Assembly: GCA_002269645.1 (NCBI GenBank) | Contig: NIVC01001049.1 | Coordinates: forward strand, 186,001 to 250,000 | Direction of reading: 5' to 3' | Length of the DNA stretch: 64,000 nucleotides | Source of the DNA: Macrostomum lignano | Taxonomy: Eukaryota | Part shown: piece after piece, positions 40,060 through 60,049 of the stretch | How the letters are laid out: every line of letters begins with the position of its first letter | Position numbering within the stretch: position 1 is the first letter of the stretch | Position numbers and translations under genes: made by a program | Notes under the pieces: model-generated | What the model was told of the DNA's origin: nothing | Database searches by the model: none | What the model saw: only the letters and a program-made list of their open reading frames with translations

Positions 40060-43000
40060 TTTTATAATGCGGAAAAGTTTTTTAATCATTTGTCAGCGTC
40101 TGTGAGGACTGTAGCGGCTTTCCAGAGTCTTGAACAATTTCGAAATTGCCCACGTGGCGCCAGGATCGAGTCACCTGCCGAACAGCTAGTAATTCTTGTG
40201 AGCCTTCAAATTTTTATGTTCTAGTGAGTTGTTAAACGCTTCTTAAAAGTAGAGAGGCATTACCATTTTTCAGCTACTCGAACAGCGGAACTCTGAGCCA
40301 GTGGATTCTGCTGCCTGAACTTGGTGACCGATTTGGCCAGCTTATCTAGTTACTTTGAGCCTTTCTGTCGTTAATACAATGATATTATTACTCGTGCTTC
40401 CTAATATTAAGCCTATTACGAGCTGCGATGGTTGTAAAATCGCCAAATCAAGCGTTCGAATTTTTGCTGTTTCTGCATGCTGATTGATTTATGTCTCAGT
40501 TGTTGTGAAATTTATCCAATATTCTTCGCTCTGAAAGCATCACCAAAAGTACACAGAATTCGGGTACAGGTCATCACAACACATGACTATAACGAGGAAC
40601 GACTTGTTCGGTACTGCCTTGTAGCCTTCCTGTATTTCTTTACTAGAATGAAATGTTGACTCACCACTGCTAAAATTATAACTTTCCACAGTACTTAATG
40701 CAGTTCCGTTCTACATGGAAAAGCTACAAGGTACTACAGCTGCACTTTATTAAAAGCCTATGCACTTTAAATAGTACGCACTAAAAGTTAAAACTTTTCG
40801 TCTGACAAGTTTCATTGGTATCGAGGAAAACTTCTGCGATTTGGCTGGACTCGAGGACGATTCAATGGTTCATCAGTGTAACTAAAAACGGTTTGCTTCG
40901 AGCGCTTTTATTATGATTAATTAAAATCGACATCGAAAATTCACTTCTACTCTCAGCTCCTCAACGGGCCGTTCCCGATAAAAACTGTACCAAGGCTAAG
41001 AAGCGCCCCAGAGCCACGCCCCAAAGTTGTTTCAGAGTCTTTGCAGGTAACACAGGTAAAATAGGAAAGAGGTGACTCTAAATGACTCTAAAACGGTGAG
41101 AATTCACCGCCGAAAATTCGCCGAAAAGTCATCAAAGAGTCAAAGTCGTCTACGACCCTGAAATTCCTTTAGTGTGTGATGCAAGTGACTGTGTGGCGCT
41201 TTTATACTGAATCTGGTGCCGGCGCATCTGCGGTACTTTATGATCTGCGATACATTTTGCGTTTATAAAAAAACTCTGTTTAGTCTACTTGAGTTGGTAA
41301 TAAGTTACGTGAATACGACTCTTGGACAACTTTTGCGCGACTCATATGATTATACAACTCACTTGATGCGCTCGAGACTCAAGAGTCTCCTCTAAGCCGC
41401 ATTGCAGTCGCTTGAGTCGTTACAAGAGTCGCTCCTGAGTTGCTCGAGTAATTTTTGCTACAACTCCTGCTAAACGATAGCGATTCTTGTCCAAGACTTT
41501 GACGTTTTCAGCGTGTGTCCAATCGCCAATAGAACAAATCAAAAAGACGGAACCTACACTTGAAGCTATCCTCGGCTGAAGGTGGCAAGTTTCACGGATG
41601 CAGCAACTGCCACTGGGCGGTCTGACGACTCGGACTCACGAACTGGCTGCATGTTGAACAAAATGCTGTTGTAACTGAAATTTGACTCACCTCCACTACA
41701 TTCCCAGTTCCGAAAAGCTAACACAGTGTACTTGCTAAGCTAACACAGTGTACTTGCTAAGCTAACTCAGTGTACATGCTAAGCTAACTCAGTGTACATG
41801 CTAAGCTAACTCAGTGTACATGCTGTTGCGACTTCCCTAGTCATTTCTTAGTTCACCTTCACTTGTCTCTGTTTACTCTGTTTTCTCTCTCTCTCTCTCT
41901 CTGTCTAGCTCAATCGTGTTATTCTTATCTCTCTCTCTCCCTTGCTGCCTTCTGATTGGTTCTCCATTCTCGCCTCTCTATTTAGTCGCGCACTCCACCC
42001 CTCTCTTTATTATCTGCAATTCAAACCGCCTAAGTTAATGTCTGGTATAAATATACTTGTTTGGGCCTTACTGGTTTATCTTAAATTCAATTTAACTCTA
42101 ATTTAAATATCTCATAATTCAATCGTTACTAGTATTTTCTCTACATAATACCTGTTCGGGCGCCATGTACATGTAGAGAAAATACTAAGATTTTATAATT
42201 CAGAAAAGTTTTCCATTGAACGAGCTACATTCTTCAGCGTCGGAAGCTGCTGTGAGGTTTGCAGCAGCTTTTCAGAGTCTTGAACAATTTCAACAGCGGG
42301 TACGGGGCGCCAGGATCGAGTCATCTACCGAACAGCTGGTCATTTAGTAATTTGCTAAACGAATTCAAAATGTTTCTCCCATTTTAGCTACTCGAATTGC
42401 GTCATTCTGAGGCAGTCGGTTCTGCTTCCTGAACATGGTGACCGATCTGGCAAGCTTATCGAATTACTTCGAGCTTTTTCTGTACTTGATACTTTCTTAC
42501 TCATATTTCTTAATATCATGCCTATCAAAAGCGCCAAATCAAACGTTCGAACTTTGGAAGTTTTCTTGTATGCTGATGGATCGAGAATTCTTCGCTACAG
42601 AAGCATCAACAGAAAGTGCACTGAAGGTCAGAAGTGGCTTGCAGGTCATGGAAAAATAACAATAATGAGAAACGTGACATTTCTAAGGCTTATTCGGTAC
42701 TACCTTGTAGCCATGCTGCGTTGCACGACGAGAATAAGTTTGTGATTCAGTGCTATAATTATAACTTCGGACAGCAAATAATGCTGCTCTGTTTTTGAAA
42801 ATCCTTGAAAAGCTATACAAGGTACTACAGCTGCATCTCAATAACTTACTATGCACTTTAAATAGTACACACTAGATGGTAAAACTTTTCGTCTGTCTGA
42901 CCATTCTTTTGTACGCAGGAAAACTGCTCAACTATTTATTGGCAAGACTAAAGCGCTTTTCAATGCGCACTTCTGGGATTCACTCTGACTACCCCATATT

Positions 43001-43800: not shown

Positions 43801-44596
43801 TAATTTAGCAAAAAATCGAAAGATGGAAAACTGAGGCAAGAGCCAGACTATAATTAGAAGTAATAAAACTGGACCTCATCGTTCGACACGCGACTATTTT
43901 TTTAATTGCTTTAAAAAGCCCGTGCACACAAAACGCAAAAAAATAAAACGACCTATTTGGGGCCGCCATATACGCAAAATTATACGGACGAGATAGAAAA
44001 AAAATTTTATTGGCAATTTTGTTTGTGCAAAAATCTGACAACCTACTTTAGAATTTCCCATGGAGCTGCATTTATCGGGACACAAATATCAAACCTCGGG
44101 AGAGACTTATGCACGAGAAACATTATAGAGATCCCTAATGCCTACTGTTCGCTGTAAAATAAATGAAAAATAAAAGAGCTGAGCGTCTCGCGTGTACGCA
44201 TTCTTTCAAGTCCGCTAACCCATAAATACAGGCATTCGAATCGGCAACTCACAGTCGAAAGCACAGTTGACCTGATTGAACGGAGAACCACTGGTCCGAA
44301 ATAATAGCAAAGTAAACAAAAAGGCAATGTGTACTTTTTCACGCACTAAAAGTACGCAGCGGAGCAATTTCAGATATCGTATGAGTATTCATAAACAATT
44401 CTCCCGAGCTATTTTAAAATCCAACAAGTCAAGCCATTCCGTGAGTGGAAAAATCAATCAAAGACAAGGAGACATGTAAGAAGCAAAATTATGATTTTAA
44501 GTAATCACGAGCTTGTAAAGAAATGGGTAGAATAACTGCAGATGCCTTTGCAATGCATGTTTTACGCTAAGTTTAAAATGCATTGAAAAGTGAATA

Positions 44597-47063
44597 TTAC
44601 AAGCTTGAACCAACTGGCAACTTCAGGCAGAAAACGTTGCCCGAGCATCTCCGACAAGCAGATGCAGCTGAGCATCGAATGACAGCAGCTTCATCGTAGT
44701 AACTTCGCAGCTGTGCTTGAAGTGCGACACCTGCAAAAATTGCAGGGTTCGAAATATTCTGATAATAAAAAACACAATGCGATAGAAGCTCATGAGGGAG
44801 ATTTTAAGCCGCACCTCAGCGAGCTGGTTCAGTGCAGCTCCGGCCTGCATGCGCCAGACGCTGACTTCCCCGCCGGCCGAGGCCGTGGCGAGGAACGGCA
44901 GGGCGCCGCTCAGATCGTCCGTCAGCCGGCAGAGGGCGGTGATTGGCTGCGCGTGGCACTGCAACGGGCGGTGAGCACAGTGCGATCAAATATTTCTTCT
45001 GAGGTCAGATTTTCAAGACGTTGAAATTCTCTGCAGCTGTTCAAAAAGCTTACCAGAAATCTGCTGACCACTGGGCAGAGCTGCATGTTGGAGTCCACTC
45101 TGAGCACCGAGATCCGCCCGGGTATCCCACAAGGGAATATCAGACAGGCTTCTCCGGGCAAGTCGCCGGCAGCGAATGCCTGCAGCAAGGCCGCAGCTTC
45201 GTCCAGCAAGTCGAGTCGGTCTGAAGCTCGCCAGCCTCCAACAATGGCAGGACCCGGCAACGCGGTGCGCAGCGTCGCCAAGTAAAGCCTGGGGTTGCCG
45301 AGCTGCAAGCAGAGCATGTAGCCCGGCTCCACGATCCGCAGAAGCACCGGCGGCCCAGCCGTCGCATCCAGGTCGCCGGCACTTTGGTGCCGAAGGGCGA
45401 CGAAACTGCCCTGCGCTGCCACCAAAGCCAAAGTGGAATCTTCAAAGCCTACGACTGCCGCGTGATTCTCAGGGATGGGGCAGAGGGCTGTCACGGGCGA
45501 GTGGCTGTCCAGCAGCTCTGCGACTCCGGCATTCAACATGTCACGCAGAAGCGACTCAATGCCTTGAAGTAGGAGCTGCCCACAGCGGATTCTGACCAGG
45601 CCTGTCCGCTGCTGCCAGCTGAGCAACAGAAGGCTACCCGTCGGCGAGTTCAGATGGGTCACGGCTCCCCAAGCTGATGGCGCCAGCATTCGATGCTGCA
45701 GACACATGGAGTCCAGGTGCCACAGCAGCACGGACCCGTCCGCGCCGCCAGTGGCAACAAAAGAAATGTTTCCAAGACGGCAGACTGCGGCGACTCGACT
45801 GCTGTGACCTCGGCTGAAGCCCAGCTCAGCGGGTGGCAAGTTTGAAGGATGCAGCAACTGCACTGGGCGGTCAGACGACTCGGGGTCGCGAACGGGCTGC
45901 AAGTTGAAGGCGAAAAAGCTAACACACTGCACTTGCTAAGCTAACAAACTACACTTGCTAAGCTAACACAGTGTACTTGCTAAGCTAACACAATGTACTG
46001 GCTAAGCTACGAACACAGTGTACTTGCAAGTCTTACAACATGCACTTGTTCGGCTCCACCAAAAGGAAGAGGAAAATGTTGCGTCGCAATCGACCCGCCG
46101 GTTGCAATAAAATTCGCTGAAGGCGCTGCTGGATCCTGGACAGGCTCCTGCGGCGAATCAGTCAGCCTTTCGTCAAACAAAATTCTGCTGCTGTCCGTGG
46201 CGGAGTCACGCGCTGGTCGGCTCCCAGAGTTGCCTGAGAATCCGTGAAGTTGAATAGTTTGCTACTTTTCAGAAAATTGAAGCCAGAAACACACATGACA
46301 TAAATTTGTATTTAAAAATGTTTCACTTACCAATAGCTCGCTGCAGCCGTTGAGAAGAGGCAATTTGGCGCTGAGGTGCGATCGAAGCGCCACGAGGTCT
46401 CTCGGGACACTCCGACAGGTGAGCAACATATCCCCGCCTGTCCATCGGTGTGCTCCGCTCCGAGCAGTGAGGACAGCGAGCTGAGAATCTCGGACAGCAC
46501 ACATCGGACTGCAGATTCCTGTGACTGGTCTCCATCTCGCTGTGTGTGACCAGCTGAGAGCACAGGTCGCAGGTCTCCTTCCTGTGGCGACACTCGCTGC
46601 TGGTGTGTCGCTGCATGTCCTTCTTCAGGATGAGCTCTTTGCACTGCTCACAGCGGAGTGAGTGCCAGTCGCAGCTCTGTTGCACATGCTGGTCCATGCG
46701 AGCCCATTCGAGTTGGACAGAGCAGCCGGCGTCGCAGTTCGGACAGCGGACTCGCAGCTTGGCGACCTCGCGTCTCGTCGCCATGTCGGGAAAGCAGGTA
46801 GCCTGGCTCACCTCGACCTCGACCTCGCCGCCAGCGTCCTCCTCCGAGTGGTGGTCTCTGAGTGTGCAGGCCTCGGTGTTTCCGGGACAGGGACGCTTTT
46901 CCACCTCGTGCAGCAGGCCGGTGACGCAGGCGTGGCACAGGCGGCACCCGTGCGGAGTCTGTCGGGCGTTGAAGAGCGGCTTGGAGCAGCTGCTGCACTG
47001 CAGGTGGGCCGGCAGATCGGAGACCGGCCGTGCGGCCGTCACACTCGAAGGCAGCTCGGACAT
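44597..47063 (-). CDS. TRAF-like RING/zinc-finger module fused to WD40 repeats (copy D); exons 47063-46331, 46233-46037, 45896-45054, 44958-44815, 44730-44623 (44597 if one G is restored)
   Basis: All four introns are GT-AG (97, 140, 95, 84 bp) with compatible phases 1,0,0,0, giving ~674-683 aa. WD-like units: RGHSSRVAAV...FVATGGADGSVLLWHL; SHSPVTALC...VVGFEDSTL; CHAQPITAL...FLATASAGGEVSVWRM. Confidence 0.72.
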
Positions 47064-47324
47064 GGCGGTTGAAGCAGTGAACTGTTTTCAAACGTTTTTA
47101 ATTGTCAGTTCTAAATAGGCTGCCTTCACTTTACTAGGGTTACTGCTAATGCCACAGGGTTCTACCTGAACTCTTCAGTACTGTCTACTGTACTGCAGTT
47201 ATTTCCTCTTATAAGGTTGTTCATATGGCGTGCGTTGCTTCCTTGATAAAGGCTGCCTGTGATTCTGTTTATAGGCGTTTTCATTTTAGATGAAGTTTTC
47301 CTTATTTACAAAACGTCTAAAATT

Positions 47325-47465
47325 AAATGTACTGCGGTGCTGCGAGTACACTATTAGCTACAGTGATGGAAATGCACTGCGGTGTCGTGAGTACACTATT
47401 AGCTACAGTGATGCAAATGTACTGCGGTGTCGTGAGTACACTATTAGCTACAGTGATGGAAATGT
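47325..47465. repeat. Three copies of a 45-bp unit; the surrounding 47245-47545 block is duplicated at 48535-48760
   Basis: Unit AAATGTACTGCGGTG...TACAGTGATGG; the second block has one unit and the same flanks. Confidence 0.85.
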
Positions 47466-49094
47466 AAATTTCCTTCGCTTTCTTCACTTTGAACAGATTC
47501 GAGCGTATATCTGCTTAAAACATGATCAGGTACAACCTATGACATTTCACGGACTACTTAAGTAGACGATATAAACGACAATTAAGTAGTCCGTGAATAT
47601 GATTTGGCAAATAGCACTCTTTAATATTGGCATCAAATCAAAAGATTGACAAAACTTAAGACATTTTTATGGCTCGCAATTCAGGCCACCCATTCGCAAT
47701 TGAGGTGACATGTTTTCGTCAGGAAGAGGTCAAAAATCATGATCAAATTTCTTCAACTTTAACTCAGTGTGCAAAATTATACTCAACTCACAGTAGTGGT
47801 GCGTACTCGTAGGCACAATTAGAAGCCACCGATGTGCTTGGGAACCAGATTTTTAAGCTGTTGATATTTTAAGCGGCTTTCCACGGATAATCCTTAATAT
47901 CTCATCGCAAGCGGCAAGTCCAAGTGAAGCCCATAGCAATTCCGTGGATTCTCCAGCAGTGAAGAACGCATTCAATACTCGTACGAGGCTATTCTACGGC
48001 TTTTCCGGCTAAATCAGAATGGTAATGTTTCAAAGAAAAGAACTTCAAAGAAAACGTGAGTACAGTGCATGCGCACACAGTTGCCGCCCAGTTAAAAGGC
48101 GAAATGCAGACTCTACTTAGCTCGCAGTAGAGTGAAACATGGTGTACGCCACAAAGTGTTTTTGTATTGCACATTGCAACTAAGTACAGTCAACACTGCA
48201 CGTTTAAAAGGGAACTTGTTTTTTGCGCTTGGCATTGTACGCAAAGTTAGTACACTAAGTTTTTCGCAACCAAGCGATGGAGTTTTGCTGCTTTATAAAC
48301 GCGTATAGGTTTCTCAGCATTGTGTCAACAAAAAATTAAGCAACACCTCAAAAGAGGCCCAGAACTTCTAAAGAAATCCCGCAAGAATTGCTGGCTAGTT
48401 TTATGAAATGATTGATGTGATCTGATTTGGATAATTGCATTACTGATATCAGAATAACTATATGATTACTAAACCCTGTATCTGTTAAACTGCAAGTAAT
48501 GAGGTGCAGAGTAAGTATTTGTACGATGTCTTCCTTGTTAAAGGCTGCCTGCATGCATCTATTTATAGGCTTTATTCATTTTGGATGAAGTTCTACTTTT
48601 TATGTACGTCTAAAATTAAATGTACTGCGGTGCTGTAAGTACACTATCAGCTACCGTGATAGAAATGTACACTTCCTTCGCTTTCTTAACTTTTGAACAG
48701 ATATAAAAACACATTTATATATCTGCTTAAAACATGATCAGATACGAGTACAATCTATGACGTTTTTGCATACAGCTGGTAAATAGGTATGAAAGGCTCA
48801 TTGTGTATTATTGAAATATCACTAAAGAGTAATGTGAAAGATATTAGAAAAATAACGTTACTATCTTTTATGCTTCTACACTTCTGTAAACAGAACTTAA
48901 AAATTCATAGGTAATAGCTACTTGTTTAGGTATTCTCAATCCCAGCTAAATATTCATGAATATCCGAGTGTTAAAGGGATAAAACTATGAAATTGACAAT
49001 AGAAAAATTCTAACAAAAGCAGAATTTGTCATCTGTTGCCTGATAATTCTTTGCCTTCATTTTTTGTCTTTAATTTTGCCCAGACAAGAATTCA

Positions 49095-49412
49095 GTACTA
49101 GAATTCATAGACTACTAGAATAGGTTACTAGAATTCATTTCCAGAGTTCATAGACTACTCGAATAGGTTTCTAGAATTAATTAATAGAGCTCATAGACTA
49201 CTAGAATAGGTTACTAGAGCTCATAGACTACTAGAATAGGTTACTAGAGCTCATAGACTACTAGAATAGGTTACTAGAGCTCATAGACTACTAGAATAGG
49301 TTACTAGAGCTCATAGACTACTAGAATAGGTTACTAGAGCTCATAGACTACTAGAATAGGTTACTAGAATTCATTACTAGAGCTCATAGACTACTAGAAT
49401 AGGTTACTAGAA
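49095..49412. repeat. 30-bp minisatellite (CTAGAGCTCATAGACTACTAGAATAGGTTA), left part
   Basis: Array is interrupted by the LTR element and continues at 58062-58290. Confidence 0.93.
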
Positions 49413-50359
49413 TTAATTATGTTGTGTCTCGGCCTAATGGCCGCTGGACGGGTCAAGGTTCGGGCCCTCCCCGCCTGAGACACCCCTGTCCCAGCCCTCA
49501 CCCCGGCTATTCCTACCCTGTCTCGCTCGGTTCGGCGAGAGTTCGCCTGACCGAACACCCTGGGATCGGCGAGAGTTCACCGTTCCCAGGTCCCTGCAGA
49601 TCCCGGCCCCACGCGGCAACCCAGAAGAACGAAAGCTCGAGCTCACCTCCTCTTGATATATCGAGTTACTAACGAAGCGTTTATTGGCCCGAAGCAGTTA
49701 TTGGCACGCGAAGGCAGAGGTACGCCGATGAACGCAAAAACAGTAAGAACGAAGCGGACACCAATAGAGAGCAAACGTGGAGCGCAGCCCGCTCAGGGCT
49801 AGCATTTAAATAATACACAAAAAAGGGGGAGGGGTGGGGCAGAATGGAGACGGCGAGCCAAACCCTGGGGCCCAGCCGGCTTATCAGCCAGCCAGCCAAT
49901 ACGAGCAGCCCCAGGGTGAGGCGGGCAACGAGGGAGGGGGGGGGCACCCAGATTGGACAGAGATTGGGCCGGGGCTGGGTGCAAAGGGCTAGGCCAGGGT
50001 TGAGACTTACGCCTCTCACAAACCCTGGCCCGGGCGCGAGACGGGGGACGGGGCGGGGTGGCATGAAAACTGAAAACAAAAGTACGAGTACATACACACT
50101 GGAAGGGCGCAGCCCAACATCCTCCCCCTCCACGAAAAAGAAGAGGAGAAAGGGGATGTCAAGCAAAAAGCAACGCATGAACAAGCAAGTCTGAAAAAAA
50201 GTTAATTCAAAAAACGACGGCCGAAAAATAACAGAAAAACTTTGACGCGACGCGTGGATATCGCCGGCATTACAAAAAACAAAAACGAAAAAATGAAAAC
50301 GGGACACAAACTATTGCGTACGCAAAAATTGAAAACGGGCTTAAGAACGCAATTCTACT

Positions 50360-52034
50360 CTACAATCGGCCAAAAAATCTACTACAGTTGGTCGCAAACA
50401 GTCGAGTCCAGTACCTGCGATCACATTCACTGTCCGCTAGGGCTTCCGGCACGAACTTGATGGCTGTCGGGTCCTTGGGGTCTCCACCAAACGGTGCGGC
50501 CGATGTCACTAGCAGGCGCTGCCGCGGGAGACGCTTAGCCCGTTGGACCGCTCGCGGGGATCCTCGGCACCGAGCGGACACCTCGAAGAAGACCCCGTGG
50601 CACTTGCTCACCAGCGCGGCCTCGACGGCCTCCGGCAAGTCCAGGTCCTCGGCCAGCATGACGCTCATCGTTTGAAACTCCGGCTGCCGGAGGAATCCTA
50701 GGGCGACCGCCCAGGCAGGTTCGCCGCCTTCAACTCGGAACAAAACCGGCAGGCCGAACTCCTTGGCAAGCAAGAACTGCTCCATCGCCGCCGTTAACTG
50801 GTCCTGGCGCTGCGACCTCTCAGCGTCCCAATTGAGCTCGACTTCGCCGACCGCCACGACACGCGGCCAGCTACCCGCTAGAAATCGTCGTACATCGTCT
50901 CGCAGCGATGGCCACCACGGTGCAGCACTGGCCTTCAGGCCCAGGGCGAACACGATCCGTCGGTCTTGCAGCAGTGGTCGGACAACGGGACATTCTAGAC
51001 GCAGGCAGTACGGCGAGTTTACAGCCGCTAGACATCGACGCACGCCACGAAGGTCCTCGGGCTGAATCGACCGGCCCAGCCTCGTTAGGTATGCCTTTGC
51101 ATCGACGAGACGCTTAGCCGAGCTGACCTTGCGCTGATTCGGGTCGTCACGGGGGAGACCTCCTGGACCGTGTCGGCCGGTCGTACTTGCTCGGGGTCGA
51201 CACCCGTTAACTCTTCGGTCGCCAAGTCGCGCTGGGCCGTCAGCGGAGTCTGCGAAAGGTGCGGCCCGTCACTCCCCTCCTCCGGGCGCCGCGCGAGGCC
51301 AGGATCCACTAAGAGAGACAGACCCCGGAGCCTCCCCAACAAGGGACCCCCCAACTCACACAGCTCAAAACCCCGCACAGCCAACAACACGCACTCAAAC
51401 GCCGCCTGCAGCACCGAAGGCGGGACCCTCCGACACCTCCCGGAGCCACCACCAGAACCTCTCTTCCGCCCATACTGATTGCACAGAAACGACACAGACA
51501 CTGCTAAGAATCTAGACAACTGCTCAGGCACACTCACACCAGCCCCATCAAGAAACCTCGCCACCTCCTGAACCACCAGGCAAGCTCCTTCACTATCCCC
51601 AGCCCTCAACCGCGCCAGCAGCGCACCCCTCAGCCGCCTACACTCAGCAAGCGCAGCCGGAGCCAATAACTCGGCTGGGATCTCCGCGTGAACTGGAGCT
51701 TCCCCTGCGGCGCTTCCCTTAAGACTAGCCAAAGCTAACCTGACCTGCTCGGGCAACTCAACGTCAGGGGGAGGATTGAAAAAGTAGGCGTACTTTAACA
51801 CCCCTTGACACGCTGCCTCCCAACCCGATCGTATACTTCCCGAAACACTGGGTCAGATAAAACGCACATCGCCATCACGTCTCGCTGAGACTCCGGAGAC
51901 TCTACCTCGGCAGGACAGACGCGGGGCCGCTTTGAGTACAGACGACTACACGCTGCCTCAATCTCCGCAGAGTTAGCAGTCCGACCCACGCCTAACACGC
52001 CATACAAATCAGTCGGTGTCGTTGGCGACGACAT
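50360..52034 (-). CDS. Cargo ORF: J-like domain + helical region + TatD-like domain (558 aa if two single-base gaps are restored)
   Basis: Three consecutive ORF pieces, each offset by -1. J-like: DLYGVLGVGRTANSAEIEAA...VLSDPVFREVYDRVG. TatD-like: LVDAKAYL...IVFALGLKA...VVAVGEVELNW...AKEFGLPVLF...LPRQRLLVTSAAPF...NCSRFF. Confidence 0.7.
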
Positions 52035-52371
52035 GGTCCTCCTGCAATGATGACATTTAAACCCAATCACTACCTATGCCTTGCGGACTAGCAACTGTGA
52101 CCCTGACCTGACCCATCCTATGACATGTTTATTTTACAATACGATTGAGAACGCTTCTTGCCTAGCATACTTTGTAATTTTAATACATTTAATGTTTTTT
52201 ACGTGCTTTCCATGCGTTCCATTTTATGATTTTTTTGTGCTTTGGGGTTGTATCATTTTTTTCATTTTAGGTTATTTTAGGCTTTCTACCATAGACAACA
52301 GCGTGGAGGCATTAATACAAGTGCATATTAAAAATCAATTTATGACGACCGCCTTGTGAGCCCACTGCGAA

Positions 52372-55300
52372 TTAACGATACAATACCGGATTCCCGTAAT
52401 ACGCTGGGGGCACACCCCGACGCTCGCGCAGTCTGCGCGGAGACACGGCTGGCGCCGCTGGAGCCACCGGTGCGCATGGCGCAACTGGCGTTCCCGGCCC
52501 TACTATCCCATGCCGAGGCCCAACGGCAACTGGTGGCACCACATACGAGTAAAACTCCTCCTCCTCCTCAAGTTCCGGCTCTTTAGTCGCCGGCCCCGCG
52601 GGCTCCTGTCTGCACCCTGCCGGCTCAGGCGGATGCGCCGACCGGCGCTGCACTGCCGTATGCCTATTCATCAACCTGAACTGCTCAGGCCGCTCGGGTA
52701 CTTTTCGCAAATTATTATAATGCACTATTTTGCTCTTTCCCCTATTGGCGTGCTTTACCCGGTAATTCAAATCGGATATCTTCTCTAACACCTTCGCCGG
52801 CCCCTTCCAATTGCAATGGAACTTGGCTGCCTCCCCTGCCTGCAGCGCAGGCGAGTATTCTAGGACGGCATCCCCACTTCTATGGCCGGGCCTCGCACCC
52901 TTGAGTCGTACAGCACTTTCTGTTTCCTCTGGTACTGCTGCAGGTTGGTCCGCACCTGCGAATGAGCCTCAGCCAGACTATTACCTAATGACTGAACATA
53001 CGCCGGAGCACTGGCAGGAATGGACTCAGGCAAGGTTCCGATGTCCACTGGAAGCCGCATCTCCCTGGCGTACAGCATGTAGTACGGGGTGTACCCCGTG
53101 CCTCTGTGAACGCTGCTACGGTACGCCATGAGAGACGGGTGGATCAGATCCTCCCAGTCTCCTTCGCCCACCGACTCACTCATCCTGCACTTGATCATTG
53201 ACTTCAACGTCTTATTGAAACTCTCAGCCTGACCATCAGCCATCGGGTGATAGGAGGACGTTCTGCATTTCTTAACGGCAAGCAACCGACACAACTGCTT
53301 CATCAAAGCCGACTCAAAATTGGTGCCCTTATCGGTGACTAGAAATTCAGGACAACCAAAGTGCGCAATCCAGTGATCAAAAATCGCTCGCGCCACCGTC
53401 GGGGCTCGCTGATTGGACAAGGGCACCGCCACCGGCCACTTAGTAAAAGAATCCTGGATTGTCAGCACGAATCGATTGCCACCTCTGGACTTGGGCAACG
53501 GCCCGACAATGTCACTCATGATCCTCTGGAAAGCTCCTTCCGAGCAGATTGGCTGCAAAGGCGCCCGGTTGCTGCGCCCAGGCTTCGCCTTCGCACAGTG
53601 GACACAGCTCCGGCAATACTCTTCCACGGAACGACTCAGCCCCGGCCACCAGTATCTCGCCTTCACTTTCTCTTGTGTCTTCCTAACCCCAAGGTGCCCT
53701 CCTGCAACCCCATCATGAAGCTCACTGAGCACTTTCGGCAGCAAAGCCGGCGGCAGCAAGATCTTTTTCTGGCACCCACTCCCGGGACTCTGAAAATACA
53801 ACAGATCAGACTCTACTCTTATCAGCTGCCGTTGTGCCCACAGCACACGCTCCTCCCACGACATCACTCTAGGCGCACTGGGGTTCGAACCCGGGTCCAG
53901 GGCATAGGAGCGGACAGCTGCAAGCTTCTTCTCGGCCACTTGCGCCTGCTGGACTTCCTTCGAAGACAGCCCACTGCCAAACACCGCGTTCACTACTGGC
54001 ACATTCTCGCTAAACTGGCAGCTAGGGCAGCTCTCATGGCCAGCGTGTTTTCGGTACTTGCGAGACAGCGAATCAGCGTTGCCGTGCTCCTTGCCTGGCC
54101 TGTGAATGATCTCAAAGTCGAAGTTCTGGAGCGACTCAAGCCACCTTGCGCACTGACCCTCTACGTCCTTCAGACTGGCTAGCCACTGCAAAGCTTTGTG
54201 GTCTGAACGAACAGTGAACTTTCTACCTAACAAATAGTACCTATACTTTTTGACGAAGTGCACGACGGCAAGCAACTCTAACCTGGTGGTGCAATAATTT
54301 TTCTCCGCCGCATGAATCATCCTAGACCCGTAAGCGATCACCTTCTCACGGCCATCTGCTTGACGCTGTGACAGGACGGCTCCCAGCCCGACGCGCGAAC
54401 TGGCGTCCGTGTCGAGGATGAACTCCCCGGCACCAGGCGAAAAATCCGGGAATGCCATCACATTCGGTGAACACAAAGCGTCTTTCAGCCTGCAAAACGA
54501 GCTCTCCTCTTCACTACCCCACTCAAACTTCACTCCGTCTGCGGTTAACCTATACAGCGGCGCTGCAATCTCTGAAAACTGCGGGATAAATGACTGATAG
54601 TAGGCGCACGTACCCAGGAATGCCTGCACCTTCTTGGCGCTACATGGCCTCGGCCAATTCTGGATCTCCTCGCACTTGCTCGGATCCGTTGCGATCCCCT
54701 CCTGAGAGACGATGTGGCCCAGAAACTTCACCCGCTCTGCGAGGAACACACACTTGGCGGGCTTCAGCTTGACATTGGCATCCCTCAGGCACTGGAAAAC
54801 ATGCTTCAATCGCTCGAGATGCTGACCCACCGACTTGGCGAACACGACTATATCGTCAAAGTACACCAGGCACTCCTTCCAGTTAACCTCAGACAGGGCC
54901 ATAGACATTAGCCTGGCGAACGTAGCGGGAGCATTGCGCAAGCCAAAACTCATGCACTTCCAGGCGAACTGACCCCTGTTGGGTACCACGAACGCCGTTT
55001 TCAACTGGTCCTTCGGCTCAATCGGGCACTGATGATAGCCGGAGGCCAGATCCATCGTCGAGAAAACACAGTTCCCTCCTAGCGCATCAAGCGTCTCGTC
55101 CATCCGCGGCGGTGGGTAAGGATCTGGCACTGTGACCTCGTTAAGGCGCCGATAGTCTAGACACAACCTCAAGCTACCGTCGGCCTTTTTAACCGGCACG
55201 ATCGGGCTCGCCCACGGAGAGTAGCAGGGATAGATGCGATCCTGCTGCAACAACTCATCAACCTGCTTATCAATTTCCTCCTTCCAGCGCGGTGGAATCC

Positions 55301-56309
55301 TACGCGCGGGCTGACTTACTGGCTTGGCGTTGCCGGTGTCAATCTCATGCGCCATCAAGTGTGACTGTCCCAACTCCGAGCTATCCCTGGCAAAGACATC
55401 ACGATTCCGAGCCATCAGGCGCTCAAACTCGTGCTTCTCATCGCCCGTCAGGCCACATCCTCCCCACTCCTTGACATCGCTGAGGGGGTTCCAGTCGTCT
55501 CGGACACTCTCCACCGAGTTCACCTGCCACCCAGCTGGCTGCTGGGCCGCCACTGGGGAGAACCAACCAATTCGGCTTCCCTTCCTTAATGACAGACTGC
55601 ATCCTGACGTGTTCAACACCCTGACAGCCAAGCGACCGTCCCCGTCAGGCATCTGTACCGATCTGGCCACCATCTGCTCGTTACTCACTCTCCTCTCAGA
55701 CTCCACAATGCCTAGGAACTGAACCCCAGAGGGAACCCTTCTCTGCAACCTGACGTGCACCACCTTCTCTTGACCTGCATTGAACTGCTCAGGCTGACTC
55801 AGCACCAGACGGCAAAGACGCGGCTTATCTGCTGATAAGCGAAACGGATACACACAGGATGCAGTCTGCAAGCAATTCCTAGCAAAGTCAATCGCCATCC
55901 CGTGTCTCACGAAAAAGTCAGTGCCCAGAATACATGCCACAGCCAGTTCCTCGACCACAGCGAACTCGTGCAAAAACTCGGTGTCCCCAACAGAAAACTT
56001 CATCGTCACCATTCCATGTACAGCAATCGGTTCCCCATTGGCAGCGAAAACGGAAAAATTCGGCAAATTCGGCAATAAGTCAATGTCGGCTTTTTTAGAC
56101 TTCAGGAAACGGTTGCTTAACAACGACACGGTGGCCCCGCTGTCAAGCAGACATGCAATCGGGGGCCCAAACCTAAACTGTGCATCCACATAGCCCAGTC
56201 CCTGCCGACTCAGCACACTCTGGGACAAGGCCGCGGCCCCCGATGCACCCGGATTCACTGACGCTGGGGCCCGGACGGGTGCCCCGGCCGAGCCCCCAAT
56301 CCGTTTCCC
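52372..56309 (-). CDS. pol: pol (PR-RT-RNaseH-IN), expressed by -1 frameshift from gag
   Basis: LLDSGAT, YFDDIVV, ILDTDAS, HDGVAGGH...CVHC, SDIVGP/VTDKG/AESFN. The C-terminal WKGPAKV (GPY/F-like) segment is joined by restoring one G at 52872-75. Confidence 0.93.
56245..56309 (-). promoter_or_regulatory. -1 programmed ribosomal frameshift signal (G GGA AAC + H-type pseudoknot)
   Basis: Slippery heptamer 56309-56303 in the gag frame; stem 1 GGGGCUCGG/CCGGGCCCC; stem 2 GCACCCG/CGGGUGC; pol lies in the -1 frame. Confidence 0.85.
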
Positions 56310-57234
56310 GAACCCGACTGGTCCCACCGACGATAGCAGCGGTTGCGCATGTGCCCTGACTGGCCACACTCCCGGCAGACCACTGCATTACGGCACCGAG
56401 CCGTAGTATGCCCTGTCTGCAGGCACCGACCACACTGCCTCTGCTGCTGACTCTGCTCAGGGGCTCGATGCTGCAAGCTCACTTTTGGCTGCTCAGACCT
56501 TGCTGTCGCCATCGGCGCAGTGGGCGCTGCAGCACTTGCTTTTAGCTGAGCCACTTCCGCTTTCAGAGCTGCTATCTCGGCGGCTGCCCTGGACTCCTGG
56601 CTGTTGCCAGCCGCTGCGGCCTGACCCCCACCATGTGCACAGCTCGCTTGCCCTCGGGCTCCATCAGAGCCAACGATGCCCTCACTTGACGCACCCGCCT
56701 AATAGCGTCCTGGAGCGTCTCTGGCGCTTGCAGCAGCACGCTCTCCAGCACCCGGGCTGGCACCCGAATCCCCTTCAAAAACCTGTCTTTCACCAACTCT
56801 TCTCGCTGGGCCGCTGGCAGCATTGGGTACGATTTTCTCATAAGCTCCTTGAGCACGTCTGCATATTCTTCAATGGGCTCGCCATCTTTCTGATTCCTAC
56901 TCTGGAACTCGGTCTTGTAATCTTGAGCAGTCCTATTCTCATCAAACCTAGCCTCTAGCTGCTCAACAAACTCATCATACGGCAAATCATCGGCCAACTC
57001 AAGATTCGCAACAGCCTTAAAAGCAGTATTAAAGTCAAGCAGACTGAGCAGCGCCTGCTTGCGCTGATCCCCTAGAATATGAGCCGCCTCACAATACCCT
57101 GTGAATTGTTGCATCCAAAGGGCAAAGTCCTGTGTGGGCACGTACTTATTTGGCCTCGGCACCCGCTGTGCCACATTAAGTTCGTTTTGCAGACGCGCCG
57201 TCAGGGCGTCAATCAGATCGTCTAAATTGGCCAT
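56255..57234 (-). CDS. gag: gag with two CCHC zinc knuckles
   Basis: ATG at 57234 (MANLDDL); capsid-like helical region; CGRCLQTGHTTARC and CRECGQSGHMRNRC. The two ORF halves join by restoring one G at 56625-29. Confidence 0.88.
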
Positions 57235-58061
57235 GGCTACAAAAACACAGAGACAACCGAAGCAAACAACACACAAATAAACTAGGCAACACACACAACC
57301 CTAAACACACGGCAGGACAGCAGGGGAGAGGACCGCTGATCCTGGTCACGGCACCACTTGTTGTGTCTCGGCCTAATGGCCGCTGGACGGGTCAAGGTTC
57401 GGGCCCTCCCCGCCTGAGACACCCCTGTCCCAGCCCTCACCCCGGCTATTCCTACCCTGTCTCGCTCGGTTCGGCGAGAGTTCGCCTGACCGAACACCCT
57501 GGGATCGGCGAGAGTTCACCGTTCCCAGGTCCCTGCAGATCCCGGCCCCACGCGGCAACCCAGAAGAACGAAAGCTCGAGCTCACCTCCTCTTGATATAT
57601 CGAGTTACTAACGAAGCGTTTATTGGCCCGAAGCAGTTATTGGCACGCGAAGGCAGAGGTACGCCGATGAACGCAAAAACAGTAAGAACGAAGCGGACAC
57701 CAATAGAGAGCAAACGTGGAGCGCAGCCCGCTCAGGGCTAGCATTTAAATAATACACAAAAAAGGGGGAGGGGTGGGGCAGAATGGAGACGGCGAGCCAA
57801 ACCCTGGGGCCCAGCCGGCTTATCAGCCAGCCAGCCAATACGAGCAGCCCCAGGGTGAGGCGGGCAACGAGGGAGGGGGGGGGGGCACCCAGATTGGACA
57901 GAGATTGGGCCGGGGGCTGGGTGCAAAGGGCTAGGCCAGGGTTGAGACTTACGCCTCTCACAAACCCTGGCCCGGGCGCGAGACGGGGGACGGGGCGGGG
58001 TGGCATGAAAACTGAAAACAAAAGTACGAGTACATACACACTGGAAGGGCGCAGCCCAACA

Positions 58062-58290
58062 ATTACTAGAGCTTATAGACTACTAGAATAGGTTACTAGA
58101 ATTCATTTCCAGAGTTCATAGACTACTAGAATAGGTTACTAGAATTCATTTCCAGAGTTCATAGACTACTAGAATAGGTTACTAGAATTCATTTCCAGAG
58201 TTCATAGACTACTAGAATAGGTTACTAGAATTCATTTCCAGAGTTCATAGACTACTAGAATAGGTTACTAGAATTCATTACTAGAATTCA
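58062..58290. repeat. Continuation of the 30/41-bp minisatellite to the right of the LTR element
   Basis: Same CATAGACTACTAGAATAGGTTACTAG core. Confidence 0.92.
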
Positions 58291-58828
58291 CTACGTTTTA
58301 CCTTCAAGCCGTTTATAAAAATTGCCTGAGCTATTTATAGAAATTACAATGAGATGCTCAATCTCAAAAAAAACTATCAGAAGCTGAGTGAGTACATGGC
58401 CAACAAATGCATCGCACTGCTCACGCTACTCAGTGTACATCAGCAACGTAAAAGAAGCGAAATTGATCAAAGTTCTTCCTGAAACATGAAACCTTCTACT
58501 TAAAACTAAAGCTTTCTTCTACACTAACGGTGAGTAGTCAGTGATGTGTGAGTAAATTGAAAAATGAAAAACGAAAATTGAGTAATAGTAATAAAACGAG
58601 AACCGTAACTCATAAAGCCTATAAACAGAATCACAGAAGCCTTTAACAAGGAAGCAACGCACGCGATATGAACAACCTTATTCAGAGGAAGAGCTGCAGT
58701 ACAGTAGACAGTACTGAAGAGTTTAGGTAGAACCCTGTGGCATTAGCAGTAACCCTAGTAAAGTGAAGGCAACATATTTAAGACTGACAATTGAAAACGT
58801 TTGAAAACAGTTCACTGCTTCAACCGCC

Positions 58829-60049
58829 ATGTCCGAGCTGCCTTCGAGTGTCGTGGCTGCCCGGCCGGTCTCCGATCTGCCGGCTCACCTGCAGTGCAGC
58901 AGCTGCTCCAAGCCGCTCTTCAACGCCCGACAGACTCCGCACGGGTGCCGCCTGTGCCAGGCCTGCGTCACCGGCCTGCTGCACGAGGTGGAGAAGCGGC
59001 CCTGTCCCGGACACACCGAGGCCTGTACACTCAGAGACCACCACTCGGAGGAGGACGCTAGCGGCCAGGTCGAGGTCGAGGTGAGCCAGGCTACCTGCTT
59101 TCCCGACATGGCGACGAGACGCGAGGTCGCCAAGCTGCGAGTCCGCTGTCCGAACTGCGACGCCGGCTGCTCTGTCCAACTCGAATGGGCTCGCATGGAC
59201 CAGCATGTTCAACAGAGCTGCGACTGGCACTCACTCCGCTGTGAGCAGTGCAAAGAGCTCATCCTGAAGAAGGACATGCAGCGACACACCAGCAGCGAGT
59301 GTCGCCACAGGAAGGAGACCTGTGACCTGTGCTCTCAGCTGGTCACACACAGCGAAATGGAGACCAGTCACAGGAATCTGCAGTCCGATGTGTGCTGTCC
59401 GAGATTCTCAGCTCGCTGTCCTCACTGCTCGGAGCGGAGCACGCCGATGGACAGGCGGGGATATGTTGCTCACCTGTCGGAGTGTCCCGAGAGACCGGTA
59501 GAGTGCAAGTACTCTCACCTGGGCTGCAGGGCGATGGTGCGCAGGTCCGATCTGGAGAGGCACTACAGAGAAAGCATGGACTCTCACCTTGAGCTCATGG
59601 ACTCGAAACTGAAGCAGGCAGCGATAGCTCAGCAGAGTCCTGGTGAGATTTGCTTTCCAAATCAGTAAATTGGTTAACCAGAAAAAGCTGCTACGAGCGT
59701 ATTTTCGGATATTAAAAAAAAATTTATACTTTTAGTATCTGCGGTCCCGCAGTCTTCTGTCGGTGCCGGAGCTCTTGCCGCCACAGCCACCGATGGACGC
59801 GATGTGGTCGACGTGAAGCGGCGAGTCGGCAGCGTCTTCGAGCAGTTCAAGAAGCTGCAGGTCAACGTGGCGAACTGGGCTCACAGCACCATGGAGCTCG
59901 AGCAGCTGGCTGACAGGTTCGGAGGCGTCTCGCAGCTGCGGACTCTGCTGAGCGGACTGGACGAGCGGACGAGGAGCGTCGAGCAGCTGCAGCAGCAGGT
60001 GCAGGAGCTCCAGCAGCAGGTGCAGCAGCTGCAGCGACATCGAGCCTGA
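58829..60049 (+). CDS. TRAF-like copy E (RING + zinc fingers + coiled coil, no MATH), 375 aa; exons 58829-59642 and 59736-60049
   Basis: 93-bp phase-1 GT-AG intron. Exon 2 (FEQFKKLQVNVANWAHSTMELEQLADRFGGVSQLR) is homologous to the copy A coiled coil and then stops. Confidence 0.88.

What the first reader, a model, noticed from the sequence alone, without database searches (positions are those of the whole stretch)
44597..47063. In-frame TRAF RING/zinc-finger to WD40 chimeric gene
Seen: copy D breaks off after ...ECPERP, runs into unrelated sequence and ends at ATTG|GTAAGT. Four GT-AG introns with matching phases then link it through a 197-bp linker exon to three WD40-encoding exons, with no stop (~674-683 aa). 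Established: TRAF7 has a RING-ZF-WD40 architecture, whereas classical TRAF1-6 end in MATH. Inference: because the N-terminal module is nearly identical to the neighbouring MATH-type paralogs, this is a recent, independent origin of a TRAF7-like architecture by duplication of the TRAF module in front of a WD40 gene remnant, potentially a new E3 ligase with new substrate specificity.
Basis: partly seen in the sequence, partly recalled or inferred. Interest (0 to 1): 0.8.

Follow-up and report, generated by a model that had tools for sequence, protein, structure and literature searches.

The report
Candidate young TRAF–WD40 fusion gene
A recently copied front half of a flatworm TRAF (RING/zinc-finger) gene sits just upstream of an older, lineage-specific WD40-like gene that has no start codon of its own; consensus splice sites would join them in frame, but no transcript data could be reached, so the fusion protein remains a plausible candidate, not a demonstrated gene.

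Summary
The sequence observation holds. On the minus strand, five exons joined by four GT-AG introns give a stop-free 674-codon ORF. The window is Macrostomum lignano-like DNA.

Copy D is a young partial duplicate of its head-to-head neighbour E58 (96% identity over 885 bp, including 215 bp upstream). It is cut inside a TRAF zinc finger at codon 223.

The downstream part is not TRAF7-like. It is an orphan family with only two homologs, both M. lignano fragments (41-44% identity), and has one near-threshold WD40 repeat. It predates D, because an older deleted copy of the locus lies at 40881-41824.

For a fusion mRNA:
- The only two consensus donors in the interval are the ones the model uses.
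- No poly(A) hexamer lies between D and the WD gene.
- The WD frame has no ATG before Met374.

Against:
- The 87-codon linker has no coding signature (GC3 0.47).
- The flatworm spliced leader ends in ATG, and that ATG would be in frame at the exon-3 acceptor. The WD gene could therefore be expressed independently.
- D's only private amino-acid change removes a predicted RING zinc ligand.
- Three of the five TRAF copies here are truncated.

Verdict: a plausible nascent chimeric gene, unproven, of modest interest.

The parts
47064..47279 (-). 5' flank of copy D (putative promoter and 5'UTR) duplicated together with the coding fragment
   Evidence: 96% identical to the 5' flank of E58 (58614-58828) as part of an 885-bp match
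46396..47063 (-). TRAF-derived part of exon 1: ATG, RING-like domain and TRAF zinc fingers, codons 1-223
   Evidence: 92-97% nt identity to paralogs E58, C35, B33 and F39. The paralog sequence aligns to TRAF6 RING-ZF structures at E about 1e-10. Pfam zf-TRAF scores only 20.5 bits against a cutoff of 27 because the last finger is cut. The D-specific change H62N falls at the eighth RING ligand position.
46331..46395 (-). Post-breakpoint tail of exon 1: 65 nt of unrelated sequence ending at the GTAAGT donor
   Evidence: No match to any paralog or to the M. lignano loci L001-L003. GC 0.585. Reads RGASIAPQRQIASSQRLQRAIG in frame. Unspliced, the ORF stops at 46323.
46234..46330 (-). Predicted intron 1, 97 nt, GTAAGT...TCTCAG
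   Evidence: GC 0.31, a sharp dip between GC-rich flanks. The donor matches the M. lignano consensus GT[G/A]AG (PMC8629364).
46037..46233 (-). Predicted exon 2, the 197-nt linker
   Evidence: Open in the fusion frame, but GC3 of tail plus exon 2 is 0.47 against 0.69-0.85 for genuine exons. Codon log-odds is -14, no better than the other frames. No homolog anywhere. The last ~14 nt and the GTAAGA donor lie in a degenerate first unit of the 22-mer minisatellite.
45897..46036 (-). Predicted intron 2, 140 nt, made almost wholly of a 22-mer minisatellite; alternatively the outron of a trans-spliced WD gene
   Evidence: TRF array at 45916-46046. The same minisatellite precedes the acceptor in the older remnant copy (41715-41824). 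The acceptor TTGCAG fits the trans-splice motif [T/C]TNCAG (PMC8629364).
45054..45896 (-). Exon 3 of the WD40-like gene; contains the only near-canonical WD40 repeat (chimera aa 338-372) and the first in-frame ATG (Met374)
   Evidence: Pfam WD40 at 26 bits against a cutoff of 27. 309 local WD40-repeat matches pile up on this one repeat. Homologous to P0001 and P0157 from residue 69 of the exon onward. GC3 0.69.
44815..44958 (-). Exon 4 of the WD40-like gene
   Evidence: Both junctions are colinear with P0157 and P0001...FL|CHAQPI and NQLAE|VSHF. GC3 0.85.
44623..44730 (-). Exon 5 coding part with TGA stop (44625-44623); a 1-nt frame difference from the homologs near 44643 removes the last ~14 conserved residues
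   Evidence: The homologs read GDAGGNTFSLELPWLD. The window reads GDARATFSA* in frame, and G-NVFCLKLPVGSSL* in the shifted frame, ending at 44597.
44006..44011 (-). First AATAAA on the minus strand downstream of D's ATG
   Evidence: No AATAAA or ATTAAA lies between 47063 and 44011. E58 has AATAAA directly after its stop. D therefore has no canonical 3'-end hexamer of its own.
40881..41824 (-). Older, deleted copy of the WD locus: minisatellite, acceptor and first ~89 nt of exon 3, joined directly to the homolog of the 3' flank
   Evidence: 41667-41570 aligns to 45920-45808, and 41567-40881 aligns to 43798-43070. About 2.0 kb (45807-43799) is missing. Identity is 67-85%. This shows the WD locus predates D.
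58614..60049 (+). E58, the closest (parental-type) TRAF-like gene: RING, zf-TRAF, coiled coil, about 370 aa, one short intron, no MATH
   Evidence: It lies head-to-head with D.
49084..58290 (-). Young Ty3/gypsy LTR retrotransposon inserted between D and E58
   Evidence: The two LTR cores (49420-50119 and 57359-58061) are 99.6% identical over 703 bp. The 1169-aa pol ORF carries protease, RT, RNase H and integrase domains.

Best explanation
Copy D plus the WD40-like gene form one young, read-through transcription unit.

Origin. An inverted partial duplication copied 215 bp of 5' flank and the first 223 codons of an E58-type TRAF-like gene: the RING and the TRAF zinc fingers, cut inside the last finger. 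The copy now sits about 430 bp upstream of an older, Macrostomum-specific WD40-like gene, in the same orientation. That gene's reading frame has no ATG of its own before its first WD repeat.

Expected products. Transcripts started at D's promoter meet no poly(A) hexamer. The default cis-splicing path is GTAAGT at 46330 to the acceptor at 46234, then GTAAGA at 46036 to the acceptor at 45897. This joins RING-ZF, through an 87-residue linker recruited from formerly non-coding sequence, in frame to the 364-residue WD40-like domain (674 aa). The same exon-3 acceptor can probably also take the spliced leader, whose terminal AUG is in frame. The locus may therefore yield both a stand-alone WD protein (the ancestral mode) and the fusion.

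Function, if the fusion is translated. It would work like an RFWD/TRAF7-type or TRIMCyp-type ligase: the RING recruits an E2 and the propeller picks the partner. It would lack the coiled coil and MATH domains that make classical TRAFs trimerise and bind receptors.

Shown: the anatomy, the duplication, the breakpoint, the open frame, the age order, and the lack of an ATG and of a poly(A) hexamer.

Inferred: transcription, the splice choice, translation, and any ligase activity.
For: - The spliced ORF is intact and the phases match.
- The D/E58 homology includes the 5' flank and ends at codon 223.
- The only two consensus donors in the interval are the ones the model uses.
- Intron 1 is a sharp AT-rich dip (GC 0.31) between GC-rich segments (0.57-0.66), as at confirmed introns.
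- No AATAAA or ATTAAA lies between D's ATG and 44011, whereas E58 has AATAAA at its stop.
- The WD frame has no ATG before Met374, so its single good WD repeat can only be translated via D or via a leader AUG.
- The open 87-codon linker has a 4-15% chance expectation before the phase requirement.
- The WD locus is older than D: the remnant is 67-85% identical, against 96% for D/E58.
- Private changes in D are 3 synonymous and 1 non-synonymous, with no stops or frameshifts.
- Per Conrad et al., as cited in PMC8629364, an upstream cis donor favours cis- over trans-splicing.
Against: - There is no transcript, EST or protein evidence. No protein in the 5.8-billion collection contains the tail, the linker or the junctions. 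The locus is absent from the M. lignano scaffolds I could fetch.
- The linker has GC3 0.47 and negative codon log-odds, no better than the other frames.
- The exon-2 donor sits in a degenerate minisatellite unit.
- H62N removes the residue aligned to TRAF6 D108, the eighth RING ligand. That residue is His in all paralogs and in the 62%-identical Logan homolog.
- The last TRAF finger is cut in half, and zf-TRAF drops below the Pfam cutoff.
- The WD ORF has a frame change relative to its homologs that removes its conserved C-terminal strand.
- Three of the five TRAF copies in the window (D, C35, F39) are 3'-truncated, so truncated junk copies are the local norm.
Confidence: 0.42

Rival explanations
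1. There are two separate products and no fusion protein. D is just another truncated TRAF fragment: a 246-aa ORF ending GK* at 46323, or a non-functional transcript. The WD40-like gene is expressed as it was before D arrived. The spliced leader is trans-spliced onto the exon-3 acceptor at 45896, and its terminal AUG supplies the start codon (M-PVRDPESS..., about 365 aa, the size of a stand-alone propeller). 'Exon 2' is then outron or intergenic sequence whose open frame is chance.
For: - The M. lignano leader is CGGTCTCTTACTGCGAAGACTCAATTTATTGCATG, and about 30% of its genes are trans-spliced. The trans-acceptor motif is [T/C]TNCAG (PMC8629364). Exon 3 has TTGCAG and starts in phase 0, so the leader ATG is in frame.
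- The terminal AUG of flatworm leaders can initiate translation (Cheng et al. 2006, as cited in PMC12582326; PMC10468722).
- The WD frame lacks any ATG before Met374. The WD locus predates D, so it needed such a start before D arrived.
- The remnant copy keeps the minisatellite and acceptor but nothing resembling exon 2.
- The linker is not coding-like.
- 18% of M. lignano operons start with a non-trans-spliced gene, and intergenic distances are commonly below 1 kb (PMC8629364). Here the distance is about 430 nt.
Against: - D has no poly(A) hexamer before the WD gene, which an upstream operon gene would be expected to need.
- Two consensus cis donors lie upstream of the acceptor, which should favour cis-splicing.
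- The acceptor motif does not discriminate: the confirmed cis acceptors of exons 4 and 5 are also TTGCAG.
- This rival is not exclusive of the fusion. Shared cis/trans acceptors are reported as common in flatworms (PMC12582326).
Confidence: 0.36
2. Both halves are decaying relics in a fast-rearranging, repeat-rich TRAF cluster. D is a dead partial duplicate, and the WD gene lost its own 5' end or promoter and is drifting. The in-frame path is a coincidence with no product under selection.
For: - A RING ligand is lost in D, and its last zinc finger is cut.
- The WD ORF has a C-terminal frame change relative to its homologs.
- A sister copy of the WD locus has already been deleted.
- Truncated TRAF copies C35 and F39 and small fragments lie nearby, and similar ones occur in M. 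lignano scaffolds.
- The chance of the open path is about 1-5%, which is not negligible.
- Neither half appears among predicted proteins in the databases.
Against: - 674 codons are free of stops, and four splice-site pairs are intact.
- The WD exons keep strong codon bias, with GC3 0.69-0.85.
- The WD exons contain long blocks identical to the 41-44% homologs.
- D's private changes are mostly synonymous.
- D is so young (2.5% coding divergence) that intactness says little either way.
Confidence: 0.15
3. The join at 46395/46396 is an assembly artefact. Reads from a TRAF copy and from an unrelated locus were merged in a genome known for high duplication and repeats.
For: - M. lignano is a hidden polyploid with very high duplication (PMC10468722).
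- The TRAF copies are 90-97% identical to each other.
- The D-WD arrangement was not found in the GCA_002269645.1 regions fetched.
Against: - The break is not at a repeat edge. It lies inside unique coding sequence with unique sequence on the other side.
- D has private substitutions spread along its length.
- There are no Ns or coverage clues. This cannot be tested without reads.
Confidence: 0.04
4. It is an ordinary TRAF7 ortholog with old, shared RING-ZF-WD40 ancestry.
For: Only the order of domain types resembles TRAF7 (PMC10424150).
Against: - The N-terminal module is 96% identical in DNA to a neighbouring non-TRAF7 paralog, and the homology stops dead at codon 223.
- The WD part has one sub-threshold WD40 repeat and homologs only in Macrostomum.
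- TRAF7's WD40 domain has seven repeats and is 93% conserved from lamprey to human (PMC10424150).
- There is no coiled coil.
Confidence: 0.01

Closest known systems
TRAF7 (RFWD1) and the RING-finger/WD-repeat ligases COP1 (RFWD2) and RFWD3
   Same: The order of modules in the predicted product is the same: an N-terminal TRAF-type RING and zinc fingers, and a C-terminal WD40-type domain that would act as the partner-binding end (PMC10424150).
   Different: - There is no coiled coil.
- There is one near-threshold WD40 repeat instead of seven canonical ones.
- The WD part is unrelated by descent, with homologs only in Macrostomum.
- The RING-ZF half derives from a local TRAF-like paralog a few percent ago.
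- Expression is unproven.
Young chimeric genes made by partial duplication or juxtaposition (Drosophila jingwei and Sdic; primate TRIM5-CypA 'TRIMCyp'); cited from my own knowledge
   Same: - A duplicated 5' part with its promoter is fused to another gene's body.
- The breakpoint lies inside the parental coding sequence.
- Formerly non-coding sequence is recruited as a linker.
- In TRIMCyp, a RING E3 N-terminus acquires a new C-terminal recognition domain.
   Different: Those cases have transcript, protein and selection evidence. Here only the genomic anatomy is known. The downstream gene may still be expressed on its own via the spliced leader.
Spliced-leader trans-spliced genes and operon-like gene pairs of Macrostomum lignano (PMC8629364)
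   Same: - A same-strand gene pair lies about 430 nt apart.
- The downstream acceptor fits [T/C]TNCAG.
- The leader's terminal ATG would be in frame, and the downstream ORF lacks its own ATG.
   Different: - The upstream member has no poly(A) hexamer.
- The upstream member carries consensus cis donors.
- No leader-containing reads could be examined.
Tandemly expanded TRAF families of free-living flatworms (Schmidtea TRAF/MATH expansion, PMC6109357; M. lignano TRAF clusters on NIVC01000672.1 and NIVC01001049.1)
   Same: D belongs by descent to such a cluster. Copies are 90-97.5% identical, and partial and inverted copies are frequent.
   Different: D is the only copy seen here that runs in frame into a different gene.

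Membership tests
Classical TRAF (TRAF1-6 type) | N-terminal RING with eight zinc ligands | tested here: inconclusive
   The E58 sequence aligns to the TRAF6 RING as follows: C23/C70, C26/C73, H38/C85, C40/H87, C43/C90, C46/C93, C59/C105, H62/D108. D has N62 at the last position. No Pfam RING model hit at E<=1.
Classical TRAF (TRAF1-6 type) | TRAF-type zinc fingers (Pfam PF02176) | tested here: inconclusive
   D scores 20.5 bits against a cutoff of 27, because the best finger (residues 190-245 in E58) is cut at residue 223. The paralogs score 44-45 bits. Homology by descent is certain.
Classical TRAF (TRAF1-6 type) | Coiled coil (TRAF-N) and MATH/TRAF-C domain | tested here: not met
   D's homology ends before both. 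In the window only B33 has a MATH domain (PF22486, 45 bits; PDB TRAF5/1/2 at E about 1e-15).
TRAF7 / RFWD | Seven canonical WD40 repeats at the C-terminus | tested here: not met
   There is one repeat at 26 bits against a cutoff of 27. The rest is weak: Beta-prop_WDR36 at 23.6 bits against 80. PDB profile hits are only weak WD40 proteins, best E 5e-4. The AF2 model has pLDDT 37.
TRAF7 / RFWD | Orthology: WD domain highly conserved across animals | tested here: not met
   An exhaustive HMMER search of 1.84 billion representatives gave one true homolog (M. lignano). All other hits were repeat-level matches to the first blade. The profile search added only P0157, also M. lignano.
TRAF7 / RFWD | Coiled coil between the zinc fingers and the WD40 domain | tested here: not met
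   The coiled-coil exon of the paralogs (E58 59740-60049) has no counterpart in D. The linker is an S/A/P/Q-rich sequence with no homolog.
WD40 beta-propeller | Repeated WD40 blades forming a propeller | tested here: inconclusive
   The size (364 aa) fits about seven blades. The predicted secondary structure is mostly beta. All database similarity is to WD40 proteins, but it is sub-threshold and the model is unreliable.
Young chimeric gene by partial duplication | Identified parental gene, breakpoint inside its CDS, continuous ORF across the junction | tested here: met
Young chimeric gene by partial duplication | Chimeric transcript and protein exist | not testable with these tools
   No expression data could be reached. 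No database protein spans the junctions.
Young chimeric gene by partial duplication | Evidence of selection on the new gene | tested here: inconclusive
   There are only 4 private substitutions (3 synonymous, 1 non-synonymous). Gene conversion among paralogs is likely.
Spliced-leader trans-spliced gene using the leader AUG | Acceptor fitting the trans-splice motif, phase 0, no upstream in-frame ATG | tested here: met
   The acceptor is TTGCAG|CCC at 45897/45896. Exon 3 starts a codon. There is no in-frame ATG in the tail, in exon 2 or in exon 3 before Met374 (motif and leader from PMC8629364).
Spliced-leader trans-spliced gene using the leader AUG | Leader-containing reads at the acceptor | not testable with these tools
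   No read data are available. There is no leader RNA gene in the window.

The most novel reading that the evidence does not exclude
A functional E3 ligase was born within the last few percent of sequence divergence. This would be a convergent re-invention of the TRAF7/RFWD architecture. A duplicated TRAF RING-ZF module with its promoter captured a leader-dependent, lineage-specific WD40-like gene. An 87-residue linker would be translated de novo from non-coding sequence, and a splice donor would have been created inside a minisatellite unit. The same acceptor would serve both cis-splicing (fusion) and trans-splicing (stand-alone WD protein), giving two proteins from one locus.
Probability: 0.12. 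Interest if true: 0.6.

Novelty: new member of a known kind. Interest (0 to 1): 0.32.

Why it matters
If the fusion mRNA exists, this would be a very young, datable case of domain shuffling in a ubiquitin-ligase family. All the intermediates are still visible in one 20-kb stretch:
- the parental gene (E58);
- the partial copy (D);
- an older deleted sister of the captured gene;
- a linker caught in the act of becoming coding.

It would also show how spliced-leader trans-splicing can ease gene fusion. A gene that takes its AUG from the leader has a ready-made phase-0 acceptor at its very first codon, so any upstream exon ending in phase 0 can fuse to it in frame.

If the fusion is not expressed, the locus is one more truncated duplicate in a highly duplicated flatworm genome, and a warning for gene predictors that merge neighbouring genes.

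Tried and rejected
- Transcript or protein evidence. Word-indexed searches with the linker plus WD part, exon 1 plus linker and the WD profile found no protein spanning any junction.
- Exact look-ups. The 562-aa paralog and the 246-aa D ORF are not on record. P0001 has no contig on record.
- Finding the locus in M. lignano GCA_002269645.1. Three regions were fetched via P0153, P0154 and P0156 (about 80 kb). They contain many TRAF copies 90-97.5% identical to D, but no WD gene, no linker and no shared intergenic DNA.
- Structure. AlphaFold2 on the WD part with its one homolog gave pLDDT 36.8, so I ran no fold search.
- Parental gene for the tail and linker. There is no match in the window or the loci. 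Six-frame translation shows nothing recognisable.
- TRAF7 orthology. Rejected.
- WD body as an insertion or retrocopy. Rejected because it contains two homology-confirmed introns and the remnant keeps its first 89 nt. The remnant therefore carries a deletion.
- Selection test on D. Too few substitutions, and gene conversion is likely.
- Rfam scan and search for a leader RNA gene in the window. Nothing found.
Full report
SOURCE AND SETTING

The window is flatworm DNA of Macrostomum lignano or a very close relative. The TRAF-like reading frames are 91-96% identical to M. lignano UniRef/NCBI proteins. They are 90-97.5% identical in DNA to TRAF clusters on M. lignano scaffolds NIVC01000672.1 and NIVC01001049.1. 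The intergenic DNA does not match those scaffolds, so this is a different cluster, haplotype or strain.

The window is rich in minisatellites. It carries two Ty3/gypsy elements.

CHECK OF THE OBSERVATION

On the minus strand:
- Exon 1, 47063-46331, 733 nt.
- Exon 2, 46233-46037, 197 nt.
- Exon 3, 45896-45054, 843 nt.
- Exon 4, 44958-44815, 144 nt.
- Exon 5, 44730-44623.

The four introns are 97, 140, 95 and 84 nt. All are GT-AG. They leave a continuous 674-codon frame. Without splicing, exon 1 stops two codons past the donor, giving 246 aa. Skipping exon 2 breaks the frame.

Between the breakpoint and exon 3 there are only two donors that fit the M. lignano consensus GT[G/A]AG (PMC8629364). 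They are the two the model uses. Of five consensus-site paths, two are open.

An 87-codon open frame arises in 4-15% of composition-matched random sequences. With the phase requirement, the arrangement has roughly a 1-5% chance expectation.

The exon 3/4 and 4/5 junctions are confirmed by colinear alignment with two M. lignano proteins. The two junctions that create the fusion have no such support.

WHAT COPY D IS

Five TRAF-like copies lie in the window:
- B33 (33429-31741, minus strand) is an intronless 562-aa protein with RING, zf-TRAF, coiled coil and MATH.
- C35 (36086-, minus strand) and F39 (39086-, plus strand) end shortly after exon 1.
- D.
- E58 (58829-60049, plus strand) is RING, zf-TRAF and coiled coil, about 370 aa. 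It has no MATH, like M. lignano P0153 and P0154.

So the 'MATH-type neighbours' in the finding amount to one gene.

D is closest to E58, at 96.3% identity over 885 bp. That match includes 215 bp upstream of the ATG. The two lie head to head, now separated by a young LTR retrotransposon at 49084-58290 whose LTRs are 99.6% identical. D is therefore an inverted partial duplication of an E58-type gene.

Homology to every paralog stops at 46396, after codon 223. The paralogs continue ...ECPERP|VECKYSHLGCRAM.... The cut therefore falls in the middle of the best TRAF zinc finger, and the Pfam zf-TRAF score drops from 44-45 bits to 20.5.

D's private changes are three synonymous and one replacement, H62N. 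In the alignment to TRAF6 RING structures, H62 occupies the position of D108, the eighth zinc ligand. It is His in all paralogs and in a 62%-identical Logan homolog.

WHAT THE DOWNSTREAM PART IS

Exons 3-5 encode 364 residues. Pfam finds one WD40 repeat (chimera residues 339-369) at 26 bits against a cutoff of 27, plus faint propeller-family similarity near the C-terminus.

An exhaustive HMMER search of 1.84 billion representative proteins gave one real homolog, M. lignano P0001. All other hits were multi-repeat WD40 proteins matching that single blade. A profile search added P0157, which is also M. lignano. P0001 and P0157 are 41-44% identical to the window protein, and both are N-terminally incomplete.

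PDB profile hits are all WD40 proteins but weak. The AlphaFold2 model is unreliable, with pLDDT 37.

The part is thus a divergent, lineage-specific WD40-like protein. It is not TRAF7, whose seven-repeat domain is highly conserved (PMC10424150).

Relative to its homologs, it has a 1-nt frame change near 44643. This replaces the conserved ...GDAGGNTFSLELPW... with ...GDARATFSA*.

AGE ORDER

A second, older copy of the WD locus lies at 41824-40881 on the minus strand. It has the same 22-mer minisatellite, the acceptor, and the first 89 nt of exon 3. That segment carries 3 synonymous and 2 replacement differences in the first 12 codons, then indels. It is joined directly to the homolog of the 3' flank, and about 2.0 kb are missing.

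At 67-85% identity, this duplication is much older than D/E58. So the WD gene was here, and presumably expressed, before D arrived. The remnant has nothing resembling exon 2 upstream of the minisatellite.

THE LINKER

The 65-nt tail after the breakpoint and the 197-nt exon 2 match nothing in the window, the loci or the protein databases.

They are GC-rich (0.57), while intron 1 is strikingly AT-rich (0.31). The exon-intron-exon pattern therefore looks real.

In the fusion frame, however, GC3 is 0.47 against 0.69-0.85 in genuine exons. The codon log-odds are negative and no better than the other frames.

The end of exon 2 and its GTAAGA donor lie within a degenerate first unit of the minisatellite.

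If the linker is translated, it is essentially de novo coding sequence.

HOW THE LOCUS MOST LIKELY WORKS

Three facts point to a single transcription unit:
- D carries its parent's 5' flank.
- There is no AATAAA or ATTAAA on this strand from D's ATG to 44011, about 610 nt past the WD stop, whereas E58 has AATAAA at its stop.
- The WD frame has no ATG before Met374, which lies behind its only good WD repeat.

For transcripts from D's promoter, the consensus cis path gives the in-frame fusion.

Macrostomum, however, trans-splices about 30% of its genes. Its leader ends in ATG, and the acceptor motif is [T/C]TNCAG (PMC8629364; PMC10468722). The terminal AUG of flatworm leaders can initiate translation, and cis and trans acceptors are often shared (PMC12582326).

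Exon 3's acceptor is TTGCAG and is phase 0. Leader-ATG plus exon 3 therefore reads M-PVRDPESS... through the whole WD protein. The leader on exon 2's acceptor would stop after about 24 codons.

This is the most economical account of how the WD gene was expressed before D arrived. It is also the main rival to the fusion today. The two are not exclusive.

I give 0.42 to a fusion mRNA as a real, substantial product. I give 0.36 to separate products only, 0.15 to both halves being relics, and 0.04 to misassembly.

If translated, the protein would work like an RFWD/TRAF7- or TRIMCyp-type ligase, with a RING that recruits an E2 and a propeller that binds the partner. It lacks the coiled coil and MATH domains, and its RING may be weakened by H62N. 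All of this is inference.

COMPARISON, NOVELTY AND VERDICT

The architecture resembles TRAF7 only in domain order. The membership tests for TRAF7 fail: seven WD40 repeats, a coiled coil and orthology are all absent. The tests for classical TRAFs also fail on MATH and coiled coil.

The event belongs to a well-known class: chimeric genes formed by partial duplication next to another gene. Its credible new twist is that a gene relying on the leader for its AUG offers a phase-0 acceptor at codon 1, and is therefore easy to capture.

I classify it as a new member of a known kind. Interest is modest (0.32) until transcripts are checked.

Noticed in passing
window 49084-58290 (minus strand): A young, apparently intact Ty3/gypsy LTR retrotransposon. 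The LTR cores 49420-50119 and 57359-58061 are 99.6% identical, and each LTR carries a 30/43-mer tandem array. The 1169-aa pol ORF (52860-56369) has protease, RT, RNase H and integrase domains. ORFs at 49681-51801, one with a weak TatD-like hit, lie inside the element. It splits the head-to-head pair D/E58.
   Followed up: partly
window 23446-27371 (plus strand): A second gypsy-like element whose gag (PNMA-like), RT/RNase H and integrase lie in three separate ORFs. It is probably degraded.
   Followed up: no
window 40881-41824: An older copy of the WD-gene locus with a ~2.0-kb deletion. Only the minisatellite, the acceptor, 89 nt of exon 3 and the 3' flank are left. It is convergent with TRAF copy F39.
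   Followed up: yes
window 31741-33429 (minus strand): B33 is the only TRAF copy with a MATH domain, and it is a single uninterrupted 562-codon ORF. E58 has an intron after exon 1. B33 is possibly a retrocopy or a different subfamily. It also differs from the others in the block at residues 203-217.
   Followed up: partly
window 35214-36086, 39073-39925 and 38810-38887: C35 and F39 are 3'-truncated TRAF copies lacking the coiled-coil exon. F39 also has an insertion and frame break near the RING. A 78-bp RING-like fragment lies at 38810-38887. The central ~330 nt of all copies are almost identical, suggesting gene conversion.
   Followed up: partly
window 47238-47547 and 48530-48765; 47325-47466; 47546-47600: D's upstream region is partly repeated 1.2 kb further up without a gene. 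It contains a 45-mer tandem repeat (3.2 copies) and a near-perfect hairpin palindrome (TTCACGGACTACTTAA...TTAAGTAGTCCGTGAA).
   Followed up: no
window 1-22000: This stretch is almost wall-to-wall minisatellites, including (CT)n/CTCTC at 300-1186 and arrays of 10-47-nt units. ORFs there are translation artefacts. For example, the 'pentapeptide repeat' ORF at 7643-8662 is a 30-mer array.
   Followed up: partly
L003 16036-16307 / 16331-17500; L001 and L002 throughout: The published M. lignano scaffolds carry dense TRAF clusters, with at least 7 copies in about 48 kb. They include an inverted partial 5' fragment abutting a full copy. This is the same kind of rearrangement that produced D.
   Followed up: partly
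P0151 (UniRef A0A1I8GMY3) and P0156 (BOX15_Mlig006760g2): Some database gene models for this family look like mergers or mis-frames. P0151 contains the zinc-finger module twice. P0156 continues into the antisense translation of the coiled-coil exon. Gene predictions in these clusters should be treated with caution.
   Followed up: no
window 44641-44646: A 1-nt frame difference from P0001 and P0157 near the end of the WD ORF. It is either a real truncating change or a sequencing error.
   Followed up: partly
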